Assembly: GCF_040938485.1 (NCBI RefSeq)
Contig: NW_027271016.1
Span: 620,001 to 684,000, forward strand
Direction: 5' to 3'
DNA: 64,000 nt
From: Diadema antillarum
Lineage: Eukaryota
The notes beneath the pieces are model-generated. The model saw only the letters and a program-made list of their open reading frames with translations. It had not been told where the DNA came from and did not search any database. Shown one piece after another: positions 17,413 to 48,709 of this stretch (positions within the stretch are counted from its first letter, which is position 1; each line of letters starts with the position of its first letter). A program made the translations under genes and the position numbers.

Positions 17413-17735
17413 ATGACCAGTGTTATGGCTACTTCAGGAGCTCGGAGAGAATATACGGCCAACAATGTCAATGGAAACCCGCGCGTTATCATGTGGTGCG
17501 TGCCCCGGTCAGTGTCAACGGCTGTGACCAAGTGTATGAGCTTCGTTGAGGGAGCTGAAGTCTGGATGGAGCCGTATTGCGTCTCAAAAACTTTGACTGA
17601 CATGTACATCGCCGCCAACAATTATGAAAGATCGTCATTCCCCCTCGAGTACGAAGGAAACGAAGAATTTTATATAAATTTCGCTAGGGCATTCGACGGG
17701 CAATTTTTTGACATCGCACACCCAGAGTTGTTATC
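17413..17735 (+). CDS. Sulfotransferase-fold protein (Sulfotransfer_5-like), copy 1, coding exon 1
   Basis: ATG at 17413 (ATG shared with the paralogues at 17425). RVIMWCVPRSVSTAVTKCMSFVEGAEVWMEPY is a 5'-PSB-like loop. GTGAGT donor at 17736, phase 2. Confidence 0.85.
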
Positions 17736-17823
17736 GTGAGTAAACTTCGCTGGACTTAAGTCTTTCATCTTATCCGTTGGTGGATATTTTGCAGTCTGAC
17801 GGTAGTCAGTGGGGTATTCAAGC

Positions 17824-20800
17824 GGGTGCACGTCACGAGACCGATACCCATGAGTCATACAGCCCACGAGTCATACAGCCCACGAGTCATACAGCCCACG
17901 AGTCATACAGCTCACAAGTCATACAGCCCACGAGTCATACAGCTCACAAGTCATACAGCCCACTAGTTATACAGCCCACGAGTTCGACACTGAGTAAATA
18001 AAGCCCATGAGTTCGACATCAAGTAGGCCTAAAATAAGCCCACGAGTTATACAGCCCATGAGTTCGACACTACGCACAAAAGGCTCACGAGACCGACACT
18101 AAGCAAAGAAAGCCCACGAGACCGACACTACGCTTAAAAGGCTCGCGAGACCGACACTAGGCAAGAGAGGCTCTCGAGACCGACACTAGGCAAAAGAGGC
18201 TCACGAGATCGACACTAGGCAAAGAAGGCCCACGAGACCGACAGGATGAACAGCGCCACCTGTAGACCAATTAATTGTATAGGGTGCCCAGATAATGGCG
18301 TAAAGAAGGTATAAGAGATGGAAAAGGAGAGTTGCTAGGGTATTACCCCGTCAATTGCCCTCCCTCACCTCCTGAACGGTTCAAGATCTTTAATTGTCTT
18401 TGCATATGTGAGTGTTTGTGAAAAAATAAACAAAGTTCTGTAAAAGTGCATGAGATATGTTTCAACGTTACTTTCGAAAATGCCAAAACACCCTCGTTTC
18501 CCTATCTGAAAAGCCCATACCGGTATACACCTACTTAGAAAAAAAAAATAATAAAATGATGTGGACATTCAGATCAACCAATTAGAAAAATACCCAGGTA
18601 TGAAATGACGTTCACTACAAGAAAATTGTTATAAAAATGGTCAGTGTTGTAGAGTGCACACCCGCTTTACATGTATGATATGGGGGGGGGGGGGGGGAGG
18701 GGGGTAGTCATCTGCAAAGATGTTGAAATGGTATAAAGTCACAGAAAATAATGTAATCGTCAATTAAGGCAGCGTTAAAAATTCGGAAAAAAGACGATTT
18801 TTTTTTATCTTTCATTTTTTTTTTATTTCCATCCTTTCACAAAAACAATAATAATCATTGTACATAATTATACATACCAAAAACCAAAAACAGACAAAAA
18901 AAGAGGGAAAATTAGCAGGTGCACACAAGCTTGTGTTTGTTCAAATTTCGCATAGATAACATATTGAATTATGCTATCAATATCTCATACATGTACCACT
19001 GAAAAGTAACGGTCAGAATGTCATGTCAAGGAGGCATGCAGATTTATCCACTTCCTTTCAAATTTACTTAGTTGTCTATTTTGAAAACCAATTTGCCTCT
19101 CAGTCATATATATAATTTTTAGCTTTGACCAGAACAGTTCAAATGTTGGCAAAATACCCAAATGTCTACATACATATATATATCATCTGTTTGGCTATAA
19201 CTATACAGTGATTCAAAAGGGGCCTATGCTGGCTTCCACCAAATACACCGAACAAGATCTCTTCTTCCTTCAATTGTAGATTTATATCAAACTTTGTATG
19301 CCACCATTTCAAAAACTCTTCCCAAAAATCACATGCATGTTGACATTCAGCGAATATATGTTCTGGCGTTTCCTCCACTTGCTTACAAAAGGTACACAAT
19401 TCAGAGTCAACAATTTTCATTTTGTGTAATCTTTTGTTCAAAAGAAGTATTCTTGTATTAATTTTATACTGAAATGTTCTGCTCTTAGTATCAACTAAAC
19501 ACACAAAAGGCATTTTGTATATAAGCTTCCATGTAATATCATCTATCGCATATTTATTACTCCAGTAGATTTCCGATGTTGGAGTCTCAAAATGTTTGCC
19601 TTTCAAAATACAATTAATAATCTGCGTTGTTAGCTTCTCAAAGTCTACTTCATTGCCCTTAAAAACACAACTGAGTTTTAAGGCTGGTATTGTTTCCCGA
19701 TTGGAAAGGCATCTCAACTTCAATTCTTTTGGAATAGCAGAAACAATCGAGCACCATTTCAAATACATTTGCTTTTCAACTCCCCTCCTCACCCATGTGT
19801 TGAAATCTATCAATCTGCCTTCTCCATCAAACAGATCTGAAATATACCATAAACCAGCCCTAAAAAATTCTGCAAAAAACACCGTTCTACCATTTACTCT
19901 AACATATTCATTATTCCATACAATAATCTCACTTTTTTCTGTATGTTTTGAATCTAAAAGTCGAAAATCAAAATAGGCACTCAGTATATCCCTGTAAAAA
20001 CTTGGGCACTGGCCCATTGTTTTACAACTCTGTTTGGACATGTTGCAAAATAAAATAAAATGACCTCCAAATTTCTGCATGAAATATCTAAAGACTCAAC
20101 TGACCATAGAGAGCTACTTTCATTCAAAAACCTTGAAATCCATTTTACCTTCAATGCATTGAAAAAGGAAGGGATATGTATCATATTTAAACCACCTTGT
20201 TCATACGAACCAATTAGGGTTAATTTTTTAACAGATCTATTTTTCCCATTCCATACAAAATCTTTAATAACACTCTCTAATTGTTTCAGTATATGACTTG
20301 GTATTGGCAAAACGGACCCAAGAAAGAAGATGCATCCATGAAAACAACTTTTCTATTTCATGAAAAATGTACCGTTTTGAGAAGAATAATTTTACAAACA
20401 CAAGCCACTGAAATCGAGATGAATCGCTGCAATAAAAAAAGTTTTCATCCGTTGAATTTCGCACATCATAATTTAAGAGAAAATTGCAAATTAAACTCTA
20501 AGCAGGCAAGTACAAGCAGGCAGATAGGATATCTAATAAGGCTTACTTAACTTGTGAAGCGAGAAAGAAAAGGGCAAAAAAAAGAACTTAGATCCGGTCC
20601 ACCGTCTAATTAGAAATTACGAAAGCCTATTAAATATAGCACGATGGCATCTCAAATTAAACCATTCATCGCTCTTGTCCTATATCATTTTTTCATACAT
20701 TTTTTTTTTTTTTTTTTGTGGTAGTGGTCCCATGAAGAGGACAATTTCATTGAAAAAAGAAGAAAAATGGTAACAATGTCGCTCCCCGTAGCGAGACAGA

Positions 20801-21327
20801 ACTGCCCCCTAAAAGCCACGTGTACAAAATACATACTTAATGTCGTTAATATGTAGATGGTGCTGTTATTAGTTACAATCTCTCGCTCTTACAGCATAAC
20901 GAAATTGCACCCGCCAGTATGTAATTTTCCCCTTAATGGAACACAATGTACAGGTACATATTTATAATTGACATGTAGATGGCGCTGTTCATCCTGTCGG
21001 TCTCGTGAGCCGTCTTTGCCTAGTGTCGGTCTCGTGGGCTTTCTTTGCCTAGTGTCTGTCTCGTGAGCCTTCTTTGCCTAGTGTCGGTCTCGTGGGCTTT
21101 CTTTGCCTATAGTGTCGGTCTCGTGAGCCTCTTTTGCGTACTGTCGGTCTCGTGAGCCTTAATTGTGTAGTGTCGATCTCGTGGGCTTTCTTTGCTTAGT
21201 GTCGAATTCATGGGCTTCATGACTCGTGAGCCGTATAACTCATGGGCTGTATGACTCATGGACCTATTTTTGATGTCGGTCTCGTGGACCGTATGACTCG
21301 TGGGTGTTGGTCTCGTGGGATGACCCC
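17824..21327. mobile_element. 3.5-kb foldback-type non-autonomous DNA transposon in the intron of copy 1
   Basis: TSD ATTCAAGC at 17816-17823 and 21328-21335; GGG...CCC termini with CACGAGACC subterminal motif. Arms 17824-18270 and 20970-21327 are inverted and built from 16-bp (CCCACGAGTCATACAG) and ~29-bp tandem units. Superfamily (MuDR- or Merlin-like) inferred only from TSD length. Confidence 0.8.
18798..20330 (-). mobile_element. 5'-truncated L1/Tx1-clade LINE (ORF2 C-terminal half), nested in the foldback element
   Basis: ORFs 19981-20310(-) FVWNGK...GGLNM...ALKVKW and 19166-20080(-) with zinc-binding CTFCKQVEETPEHIFAEC. After a frameshift the frame continues ...TERQIG...KFERKW to about 19023. 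AATAAA and an A-rich tail at 18798-18827. Confidence 0.85.
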
Positions 21328-47257: not shown

Positions 47258-47761
47258 GTGAGTACTTTTACGTGAACTTAATTTCATAGTTCAAGTATGT
47301 TTATTTTGCAATTGGATCGTATTGATTTAGATTTTTGGACAAGGTCCGGCATAAATAATGTTATAACCCCATACACTTAGTGTATGTACAATCGCAAAAA
47401 TAATTAATGTTAGCTTTACACTTCTATCCTTTCAGTTTGACAAGGGTTGCTCTTCATACAATTTCGCAACGAATGCGATGGCTGCGTTGTCAAATGACCT
47501 ACGGTCATGACAGTACATAAACATCTGCATGCATCTCAGAGATTTGACAGCGGTTACCATTGCAATGATTGGAATATGCAAACAAACGTTACAAAATACA
47601 CTGTATAATGCAATGAAGTTTTTTAAAAATGCTTGTGAAAGCTTTTACAGTTTTATGTCTACGAAGTTCCAGCTGTTTGGCAGAACCCTGGCGTCTCAAT
47701 TTGTTACCTTTCTCTTAGTGTGTATGTGCATTTGTGTATGTGTGTGTATGTGTGTGTGTGT

Positions 47762-47818
<57 letters not shown>

Positions 47819-48038
47819 GGGGTGTCAAGAGCAATGCTCGTGGTTGGGTCAAGGGTCTAATGGGGTTCGCGCCCCTTTTTGTGAGAATCAAGTGTTTGAG
47901 AACAGCCCTTCCCCTTCCCCCGGTTTTGCGGTCTCCGGAAATAAGTAGAGTCAAACCTATACCGACAATACATTTTGTTCAATAAATTTCTGTAGAGTAA
48001 AAATCTATGTACATCTTTCCACTTGTATTTGGAAACAG

Positions 48039-48709
48039 ACCGGCGGCATTGAAGAAGAAGCTTGATTCTATCGACCCAGCAGTACGATTTGTCTTCGTCA
48101 AGGACATGGGGTTTGGGATACCCCCATCCCGCTTCAGATACCTCCCTGATAAAGAAAGCGGCTTCCGGCATCTCTTTTTAATTCGGCATCCGGTCAAGGT
48201 CTATAAGTCCTTCCGGAAGGGGGCACTTGAGCTTCCTCTACCAGAAGTGGAAAAGAAGCCCGACCCAGAGACATTTCACATTCTCTCGAGCCTTCCTCCG
48301 ACTACTGCATGAGGACGCGGAGTTTGCCTTCAGGTCCCTCCACAGGCTGTGGGGTCATCTCCGTGAGAGAGGCGACGAAGGCATGGTCATCATGGACATC
48401 GACGATCTCATAACCGACCCGTCGAAGATGCTCCCTCGCCTCTTCCACGCTCTCAACATTCCGTACTCGGAGGACCTCCTGACTTGGGACCAATCCGCCG
48501 ACGTGGTGCTGAAGTGGCGGAGCGTCTGCCCAAACGTGAGAGATGCTCCCCAGTACTCCCAGTGGTTTAGAAGTGCATTCAAGAGCACGTGTTTCAAGCC
48601 GTCTTCAACTACAACGACGCTAGAGGGCGTGACACCAGATATTATAGAAGTTGTACAAAAAGAGATGCCCTATTATGAGGAAATGTACAAGATGAGAATA
48701 ACTCCTTGA
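48039..48709 (+). pseudogene. Sulfotransferase-fold protein, copy 4, exon 2 with 4-bp insertion and premature stop
   Basis: The exon is 671 bp against 667 bp in copies 1-3. ACTACT-GCAT-GAGGAC at 48307-48310 creates TGA at 48310-48312 (191-aa product). The downstream frame is otherwise intact to 48709. Confidence 0.8.

What the first reader, a model, noticed from the sequence alone, without database searches (positions are those of the whole stretch)
17413..48709. Tandem array of four cytosolic sulfotransferase-fold genes of an uncharacterised family
Seen: four head-to-tail genes with the same phase-2 intron, 322-325 aa, no signal peptide or TM segment, and PRSVST and R-x7-S motifs. Established: these resemble the PAPS 5'-PSB and 3'-PB motifs. 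The pattern W-x-x-PRS-x-ST...EP...K-x-M...FLIRHP...DDL..DP...L.W...ST.F matches the Sulfotransfer_5-type domain of bacteria and plant BCAT-like proteins, not the vertebrate cytosolic SULT families. Inference: a lineage-specific enzyme expansion for sulfating small molecules. Echinoderms make many sulfated steroids, saponins and pigments, so this is a candidate specialised-metabolism or detoxification locus. Activity is not demonstrated.
Basis: partly seen in the sequence, partly recalled or inferred. Interest (0 to 1): 0.72.

Follow-up and report, generated by a model that had tools for sequence, protein, structure and literature searches.

The report
Sea-urchin orphan sulfotransferase gene array
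The window holds a row of four two-exon genes (three intact, one broken) from the long-spined sea urchin Diadema antillarum; they encode soluble enzymes that look like working sulfate-transferring enzymes of a large, uncharacterised family, and what they sulfate is unknown.

Summary
Four head-to-tail, two-exon genes with one phase-2 intron lie at 17425-48709. They have no membrane segment and carry the PAPS-binding motifs.

Copies 1-3 are intact (325, 322 and 322 aa). Copy 4 is a pseudogene: a 4-bp insertion at 48307-48310 gives a stop at 48310-48312. The same insertion is in the second haplotype contig.

The proteins pass the Pfam Sulfotransfer_5 (PF19798) threshold. A family profile finds the CurM and olefin-synthase sulfotransferase domains (E 7e-16 and 5e-11). 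An AlphaFold model (pLDDT 92) matches only sulfotransferases (Z 13.3). The family-wide conserved residues are Arg25, Ser28, Thr29, Glu46 (+21 from the Arg, as in TPST and CurM), Lys122, Arg150 and Ser158.

The genome is Diadema antillarum. It holds at least 150 exon-2 matches of this family. The other haplotype has six copies at this locus, three of them broken. The syntenic D. setosum locus has two, one broken.

Change among the young copies is concentrated in residues 49-101 (dN/dS about 1.1-1.3), while the cofactor and catalytic core is frozen.

The substrate and expression remain unknown; no RNA run was listed. The scan has already found arrays of this same family on other DNA of this genome. 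It is a new member of a known, uncharacterised kind.

The parts
17425..17735 (+). Copy 1, exon 1 (start codon to phase-2 donor). Carries the 5'-PSB loop PRSVST and the Glu of EPY.
   Evidence: The ortholog P0001 begins at the same Met.
17736..21949 (+). Copy 1 intron, 4.2 kb. It is enlarged by a non-LTR retroelement fragment on the minus strand (ORFs 19166-20310).
   Evidence: zf-RVT match, E 5.9e-9. The D. setosum ortholog has an intron of about 0.7 kb.
21950..22616 (+). Copy 1, exon 2 with stop. Carries KDM, the 3'-PB motif FLIRHPVKVYKS and the C-terminal half.
   Evidence: Pfam PF19798, E 5.2e-9, 36.3 bits against a cut-off of 23.2.
28149..28450 (+). Copy 2, exon 1.
29210..29876 (+). Copy 2, exon 2 with stop.
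   Evidence: Pfam PF19798, E 7e-7. Identical to the C755 allele.
34564..34865 (+). Copy 3, exon 1.
35610..36276 (+). Copy 3, exon 2 with stop.
   Evidence: Pfam PF19798, E 2.6e-9. Two residues differ from D. antillarum P0002.
46956..47257 (+). Copy 4 (pseudogene), exon 1. The frame is open.
48039..48709 (+). Copy 4 (pseudogene), exon 2, broken by a 4-bp insertion.
   Evidence: It reads as two ORFs in different frames. Alignment A1 shows the insertion. It is shared with the C755 copy.
48307..48312 (+). The 4-bp insertion (48307-48310) and the premature TGA that results (48310-48312) in copy 4.
41344..46607 (.). Repeat-rich block between copies 3 and 4, with inverted and tandem repeats and a flip of GC skew. 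The C755 haplotype lacks most of it.

Best explanation
The locus is a tandem, birth-and-death array of stand-alone genes for soluble PAPS-dependent sulfotransferases of the Pfam Sulfotransfer_5 family in Diadema antillarum. Three are intact and one is dead in this haplotype.

Inferred mechanism:
- The strand-loop-helix PRSVST (Arg25, Ser28, Thr29) holds the 5'-phosphosulfate.
- Arg150 and Ser158 (R-x7-S) hold the 3'-phosphate.
- Glu46, 21 residues after the Arg as in TPST and CurM ST, deprotonates an acceptor hydroxyl.
- Lys122 stabilises the transition state and the leaving group.
- Two variable segments (residues 49-101 and about 162-201) are proposed to form the acceptor pocket. They differ between copies, so that each copy would sulfate a different small acceptor.

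Shown: gene structure, fold, conserved residues, expansion and gene turnover. Inferred: catalysis, acceptor class, and the role of the variable segments.
For: - Pfam PF19798 is above threshold on exon 2 of all four copies.
- All 120 listed relatives but three short fragments carry PF19798.
- The family profile finds CurM ST (4gbm, E 7.2e-16) and OLS ST (4gox, E 5.3e-11). The alignment runs from the PSB loop through RHP..S, with Glu on Glu and Lys on Lys.
- The AlphaFold2 model of the 92%-identical ortholog has pLDDT 92.1 and pTM 0.91.
- Foldseek gives 70 hits at E<=0.001, and every one of the rows listed is a sulfotransferase.
- VIA-align gives Z 13.3 to 4gox and 4gbm and 12-12.8 to TPST1/2.
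- Across 59 family members, W21, P24, R25, S28, T29, E46, K122, D123, R150 and S158 are kept in at least 85% of rows.
- TPST2's catalytic Arg78, Glu99 and Lys158 have the same Arg-to-Glu spacing (PMC10951654). The rule 'basic residue, Ser, and a His or Glu base' is stated in PMC6637879.
- Selection: among c2-c4, residues 1-48 have dN=0 and exon 2 has dN/dS 0.1-0.3, so the copies were kept under constraint.
- Residues 49-101 have dN/dS 1.1-1.3. Their nonsynonymous-to-synonymous ratio is higher than in the rest of the gene (Fisher p 0.004, 4e-5 and 0.009).
- Residues 49-101 and about 162-201 are also the most variable and gap-rich parts family-wide.
Against: - No enzyme of this Pfam family has been characterised, as far as the paper search shows.
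- No RNA evidence is available.
- hmmscan aligns only the C-terminal part of the Pfam profile (positions 136-222 of 226).
- High turnover suggests that single copies are dispensable: copy 4 is dead, three of six copies on the other haplotype are broken, and the D. setosum type-2 gene has a stop and lost Arg150.
- dN/dS near 1 in residues 49-101 fits relaxed constraint as well as diversifying selection.
- I could not measure distances in the model, so placing the variable segments at the acceptor site is by analogy only.
Confidence: 0.72

Rival explanations
1. The proteins are 'activating' sulfotransferases like CurM ST and OLS ST, or retinol dehydratase and LGS1. In this reading sulfation makes a leaving group for elimination or cyclisation, so the end products are not sulfated.
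For: The closest solved relatives, by sequence profile and by structure, are CurM ST and OLS ST. Retinol dehydratase and LGS1 also appear among the fold matches.
Against: The genes stand alone. No PKS, ACP or thioesterase lies in the window. Identity to CurM ST is only 15-17%, and Z for TPST is within 1 unit. The resemblance may therefore only reflect a shared old Glu-base branch of the fold.
Confidence: 0.08
2. The proteins sulfate tyrosines of proteins or peptides, as TPST does, but in the cytosol.
For: They share the Arg / Glu(+21) / Lys catalytic set and have Z 12-12.8 to TPST1/2.
Against: There is no signal anchor or membrane segment, whereas TPSTs are Golgi enzymes. The profile E-value to TPST1 is only 0.05. 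Over a hundred rapidly turning-over paralogs fit diverse small acceptors better than a protein-modification system does.
Confidence: 0.05
3. The array is largely decaying, functionally redundant DNA. The open copies are recent duplicates not yet hit by mutations and have no distinct role.
For: Copy 4 is dead in both haplotypes. L004 and c3' on C755 are broken. The D. setosum type-2 gene has a stop and an R-to-Q change in the 3'-PB motif. Copy number differs between haplotypes.
Against: Exon 2 has dN/dS 0.1-0.3 at dS 0.13-0.22, and the cofactor and catalytic part has dN=0. The type-1 gene is intact in both Diadema species at dN/dS well below 1. This clade has intact counterparts in S. purpuratus and L. 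pictus.
Confidence: 0.12

Closest known systems
Pfam PF19798 Sulfotransfer_5. Members include stand-alone 'branched-chain-amino-acid aminotransferase-like protein 2' or 'sulfotransferase family protein' of echinoderms, cnidarians, fungi and bacteria, and the N-terminal domain of plant BCAT-like proteins.
   Same: Matches above the gathering threshold. The same conserved W..PRS.ST, EP, KD, FLIRHP..S and DDL..P blocks. ESM Atlas neighbours are all PF19798 clusters, including an echinoderm cluster of 120 members.
   Different: hmmscan aligns only profile positions 136-222. The urchin proteins carry longer variable segments (residues 51-100 and 161-190). They are stand-alone, unlike the plant fusions to Aminotran_4 or the algal fusions to rhodanese.
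CurM and olefin-synthase sulfotransferase domains (PDB 4gbm, 4gox)
   Same: The best solved relatives by profile (E 7e-16, 5e-11) and by structure (Z 13.3, about 225-235 residues aligned). The PSB Arg, the Glu 21 residues later, the Lys and the RHP..S motif all align.
   Different: Those are domains inside bacterial polyketide synthase modules and act on ACP-bound beta-hydroxyacyl chains. These are free-standing animal genes with an intron and no PKS context. Identity is 15-17%.
Tyrosylprotein sulfotransferases TPST1/2
   Same: The fold (Z 12-12.8) and the Arg / Glu(+21) / Lys catalytic arrangement.
   Different: TPSTs are Golgi type II membrane proteins that act on peptides. These proteins have no anchor. 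Sequence similarity is marginal (E 0.05).
Classical cytosolic SULTs (Pfam PF00685), including the sea-urchin pigment-cell Sult
   Same: Soluble, about 300 aa, PAPS-binding fold (Z 9-10.6).
   Different: No PF00685 match. The base is a Glu where SULTs have a His, and there is no GxxGxxK/GDWKNHFT motif. The pigment-cell Sult has that motif (PMC3144734).

Membership tests
PAPS-dependent sulfotransferase superfamily | Single alpha/beta sulfotransferase fold | tested here: met
   AF2 model with pLDDT 92. Foldseek and VIA-align list only sulfotransferases, with top Z 13.3. The model is of the 92%-identical ortholog P0001, not of a joined window protein.
PAPS-dependent sulfotransferase superfamily | 5'-PSB strand-loop-helix with a basic residue and Ser/Thr | tested here: met
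   PRSVST is in all four copies. R25 is invariant and S28 and T29 are kept in at least 90% of 59 relatives. It aligns to PRSGST of CurM ST.
PAPS-dependent sulfotransferase superfamily | 3'-PB motif with Arg and an invariant Ser | tested here: met
   FLIRHPVKVYKS is in all copies. R150 is kept in at least 90% and S158 is invariant. It aligns to LVRHPYSVIES of CurM ST.
PAPS-dependent sulfotransferase superfamily | Catalytic base (His or Glu) between the two PAPS motifs | tested here: met
   Glu46 is invariant in 59 sequences and aligns with the Glu of CurM and OLS ST. The rule is stated in PMC6637879.
PAPS-dependent sulfotransferase superfamily | PAPS-dependent sulfuryl transfer | not testable with these tools
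   Needs a recombinant enzyme assay.
Pfam PF19798 Sulfotransfer_5 | Score above the curated gathering cut-off (23.2 bits) | tested here: met
   Exon 2 of c1-c4 scores 36.3, 29.3, 37.3 and 26.0 bits. The full-length orthologs score 33-42 bits. Coverage is partial (profile positions 136-222).
Cytosolic SULT (PF00685 Sulfotransfer_1) | PF00685 match, a catalytic His, and a C-terminal GxxGxxK motif | tested here: not met
   No PF00685 hit at E<=1. The base position holds Glu. No such motif is seen in the translations.
CurM/OLS-type PKS sulfotransferase domain | Embedded in a PKS module between ACP and thioesterase | tested here: not met
   Stand-alone 322-325-aa genes. The window neighbours are retroelement fragments only.
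TPST | N-terminal signal anchor (Golgi type II membrane protein) | tested here: not met
   The maximum 19-residue hydropathy is 0.9, and the first strand starts at residue 17.

The most novel reading that the evidence does not exclude
The Sulfotransfer_5 genes of echinoids (at least 150 exon-2 matches and about 240 candidates in this assembly, which includes haplotigs) form a large, unrecognised arm of the sea-urchin chemical defensome or specialised metabolism. In this reading a frozen PAPS and Glu-base core is combined with two rapidly diversifying acceptor-binding segments. Arrays such as this one would then generate new acceptor specificities by duplication, partial gene conversion and loss.
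Probability: 0.3. Interest if true: 0.6.

Novelty: new member of a known kind. Interest (0 to 1): 0.4.

Why it matters
Sulfotransfer_5 is a widespread protein family with no characterised member. In sea urchins it has grown to over a hundred genes, more than the classical SULTs usually counted in the 'chemical defensome' (that comparison is my own recollection and was not tested here).

This array gives a compact set for functional work:
- two old lineages (type 1 and type 2);
- young paralogs that differ almost only in one 50-residue segment;
- natural knock-outs, and copy-number differences between haplotypes.

It would suit de-orphanising the family and mapping what sets acceptor specificity. 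By itself the locus is one more instance of a family the scan has already met several times in this genome.

Tried and rejected
- NCBIfam scan of the exon products: no family.
- Single-sequence search of PDB sequences with exon 2: only chance hits, E >= 0.2. The family profile was needed.
- Genome scan with the Pfam model itself: only 6 hits at E<=1e-5, because the model is weak on urchin members, so it is useless for counting.
- RNA evidence: no run could be listed. Read laying was therefore not used, and the splice junctions rest on consensus signals and on the annotated D. setosum model.
- Link to echinochrome pigment synthesis: rejected. The pigment-cell sult is SULT1-type.
- Paper searches for the Pfam name, for 'aminotransferase-like protein 2' with sea urchin, for six S. 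purpuratus LOC ids, and for Diadema with sulfotransferase: no functional study found.
- The CurM ST structure paper could not be fetched. The paper's residue numbers for CurM are therefore not quoted; I rely on the alignment.
- Order of type-2 duplications relative to the D. setosum split: unresolved, support 44-69%.
- The large representative-protein search was not run, since the word search, Pfam and the Atlas had already placed the family.
Exons were searched by reference, and the natural full-length ortholog P0001 was used for the model. In scripts, exon pieces were laid side by side only to count substitutions.
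Full report
OBSERVATION

The window has four + strand gene copies, each made of two open reading frames. Exon 1 starts at 17425, 28149, 34564 and 46956. Exon 2 ends at 22616, 29876, 36276 and 48709. DNA alignments show one shared donor (..CTGTC|GTGAGT, two bases of a codon left in exon 1, so phase 2) and one shared acceptor (AACAG|A).

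With these sites, copies 1-3 encode 325, 322 and 322 residues. The annotated Diadema setosum protein P0001 has exactly this junction (..PELLS|PAMIKKK..) and starts at the same Met.

Copy 4 is different. Its exon 2 carries a 4-bp insertion at 48307-48310, which gives a TGA at 48310-48312. The 99.4%-identical copy on contig C755 has the same insertion and a further 7-bp deletion. The lesion is therefore real and copy 4 is a pseudogene.

No stretch is hydrophobic enough for a membrane segment: the highest 19-residue hydropathy is 0.9.

ORGANISM AND ASSEMBLY

Exon 2 of the C755 allele of copy 3 is identical to D. antillarum protein P0002. C755 has the same length (815,968 bp) as the contig recorded for P0002. 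The genome is therefore D. antillarum.

The assembly is 1.75 Gb in 2,963 contigs. Many family hits come in pairs with equal scores on two contigs. C755 matches the window at 99.7% over 15 kb. The assembly therefore contains both haplotypes.

WHAT THE PROTEINS ARE

- Pfam: PF19798 (Sulfotransfer_5) matches exon 2 of all four copies above its cut-off (26-37 bits against 23.2), though only over profile positions 136-222. NCBIfam gives nothing.
- Profile search: a profile of 59 relatives finds the CurM sulfotransferase domain (4gbm, E 7.2e-16) and the olefin-synthase sulfotransferase domain (4gox, E 5.3e-11). The alignment runs from the PSB loop to beyond the 3'-PB motif. PRSVST aligns with PRSGST, the Glu of EPY with the Glu of PELH, KD with DK, and RHP..S with RHP..S.
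- Structure: an AlphaFold2 model of P0001 (92% identical to copy 1 over exon 2) has pLDDT 92.1. Foldseek's listed hits are all PAPS sulfotransferases. VIA-align gives Z 13.3 to 4gox and 4gbm, 12-12.8 to TPST1/2, and 9-11 to Stf, Teg/StaL, heparan-sulfate and cytosolic enzymes.
- Conserved residues: across the family, W21, P24, R25, S28, T29, E46, K122, D123, R150 and S158 are kept in at least 85% of rows.
- Catalytic arrangement: Arg25 to Glu46 is +21. The same spacing holds for Arg78 to Glu99 of human TPST2, whose Arg78, Glu99 and Lys158 are the catalytic residues (PMC10951654). The general rule of a basic residue, a Ser, and a His or Glu base is stated in PMC6637879.

I conclude that the intact copies encode soluble, probably active, PAPS-dependent sulfotransferases with a Glu base. 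Activity itself is inferred.

FAMILY AND HISTORY

The ESM Atlas and the profile word search place the proteins among PF19798 clusters. These come from:
- all five echinoderm classes;
- a nemertean;
- cnidarians;
- Mucoromycota;
- green algae (fused to rhodanese);
- plants (fused to Aminotran_4);
- bacteria.

Source names are 'uncharacterized protein', 'branched-chain-amino-acid aminotransferase-like protein 2' or 'sulfotransferase family protein'. Only five papers mention the Pfam name or accession, and none characterises a member.

In this genome the exon-2 query gives 150 scored matches, all at E <= 4e-23, out of 242 candidates. That suggests roughly a hundred or more genes per haploid genome. 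Nearly all matches begin at the start of exon 2. A 33%-identical paralog (P0011) splits at the aligned position. The intron is therefore old within the family, which argues against recent horizontal acquisition.

A quick ML tree puts the echinoderm sequences together (SH-aLRT 91). It places the window's genes in a 100%-supported clade that holds one S. purpuratus protein, one L. pictus protein and a second Diadema-only group. That second group is the 62%-identical cluster on C34/C142/C164.

LOCAL DYNAMICS

The duplicated unit covers the genes and their spacers.

The syntenic D. setosum locus keeps both flanks but has only two genes:
- Ds1 is intact, is the ortholog of copy 1, and has an intron of about 0.7 kb.
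- Ds2 is of the copy 2-4 type but has an in-frame stop and Gln in place of Arg150.

DNA trees separate type 1 (c1, Ds1) from type 2 (c2-c4, Ds2) with 100% support. The branching order inside type 2 is unresolved.

The C755 haplotype has six copies:
- c1', c2' and a 99%-identical extra c2-like copy (L003) are open.
- L004 is copy-4-like and has a frameshift and a stop in exon 1.
- c3' has a 3,265-bp insertion in exon 1. This explains why P0002 lacks 29 residues.
- c4' is the pseudogene described above.

This is a birth-and-death locus with copy-number and presence/absence polymorphism.

SELECTION PATTERN

Among copies 2-4:
- Residues 1-48 (PSB loop to the catalytic Glu) have no amino-acid change.
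- Exon 2 has dN/dS 0.1-0.3.
- Residues 49-101 have dN/dS 1.1-1.3, at the same synonymous divergence as the rest.
- Their nonsynonymous-to-synonymous ratio is higher than in the rest of the gene (Fisher p 0.004, 4e-5 and 0.009).

Between copy 1 and the others, synonymous divergence is mosaic. It is 0.38-0.49 in residues 49-101 and about 162-201, but 0.06-0.24 elsewhere. This pattern suggests gene conversion of the core, with the two variable segments escaping it.

The same two segments are the most variable and gap-rich in the whole family, yet they are confidently modelled as helices. By analogy with other sulfotransferases I take them to line the acceptor site. dN/dS near 1 does not separate diversifying selection from relaxed constraint.

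CONTEXT AND FUNCTION

The window holds no pathway partner. The other ORFs are a LINE reverse transcriptase (14665-16179), a retroelement fragment in the intron of copy 1, an LTR element and an orphan ORF.

No RNA run could be listed. The sea-urchin pigment-cell 'sult' is a classical SULT1-type gene, since its qPCR probe encodes GDWKNHFT (PMC3144734). It gives no link between this family and pigment synthesis. The acceptor therefore remains unknown. Small molecules are the most likely class, given soluble enzymes and a large, fast-turning family, but this is inference.

COMPARISON WITH EARLIER NOTES OF THE SCAN

Several other windows of this same genome were already reported as arrays of the same family, with the same reading: D. 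antillarum, Sulfotransfer_5, Arg..Glu(+21), unknown acceptor. I reached these points independently before reading the notes. The notes are not evidence.

New for this locus:
- the shared pseudogene;
- the four-versus-six-copy haplotypes;
- the two-gene D. setosum state;
- the segment-specific substitution pattern.

VERDICT

The array is real and is correctly assigned to the Sulfotransfer_5 kind. One of the four genes is dead, and the function beyond 'sulfotransferase' is open. It is a new member of a known, uncharacterised kind, of moderate interest.

Noticed in passing
window 14665-16179 (-): A 504-aa ORF with a reverse-transcriptase domain (RVT_1, E 2.8e-31): a LINE-type element just upstream of the array.
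   Followed up: partly
window 19166-20310 (-): A retroelement tail (zf-RVT, E 5.9e-9) sits inside the intron of copy 1. It stretches the intron to 4.2 kb, and a 23-A run lies just before the acceptor. The D. setosum ortholog has an intron of about 0.7 kb.
   Followed up: yes
window 41344-46607: A block of inverted repeats (42166-42751 against 44870-45696) and tandem repeats (42789-43567), with a flip of GC skew. The C755 haplotype lacks most of it. A related repeat lies in the D. setosum locus (L031:20769-21682).
   Followed up: partly
G000:C755:496001-556000 (L034-L039): The other haplotype carries six copies. Two extra copies lie between c2 and c3: L003 is open, and L004 has a frameshift and a stop in exon 1. 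There is also a 3,265-bp insertion in exon 1 of the copy-3 allele, which explains the short (293-aa) annotated protein P0002.
   Followed up: yes
L031:14955-16690 (D. setosum, OZ188192.1): The second gene of the syntenic D. setosum locus has an in-frame stop (..DAPQ*AYMQWF..) and Gln instead of the invariant 3'-PB Arg. It is probably a pseudogene and has no annotated protein.
   Followed up: partly
G000:C53:956221-956811 and G000:C138:2374523-2375101: Family members that match Pfam profile positions 2-180 within a single open frame of about 300 aa. They appear to lack the phase-2 intron.
   Followed up: no
window 35287-35517 and 47529-47948: (GT)n/(CA)n microsatellites in the introns of copies 3 and 4. 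They show up as Cys-Val-rich ORFs.
   Followed up: no
window 28110-28148, 34525-34563, 46917-46955: Copies 2-4 have a pyrimidine tract followed by CAG about 13 bases before the start codon. This suggests an upstream non-coding exon. Copy 1 lacks it.
   Followed up: no
window 1969-3012: Overlapping ORFs of 288 and 317 aa on opposite strands, in a stretch of 49% GC. Neither has a Pfam match.
   Followed up: partly
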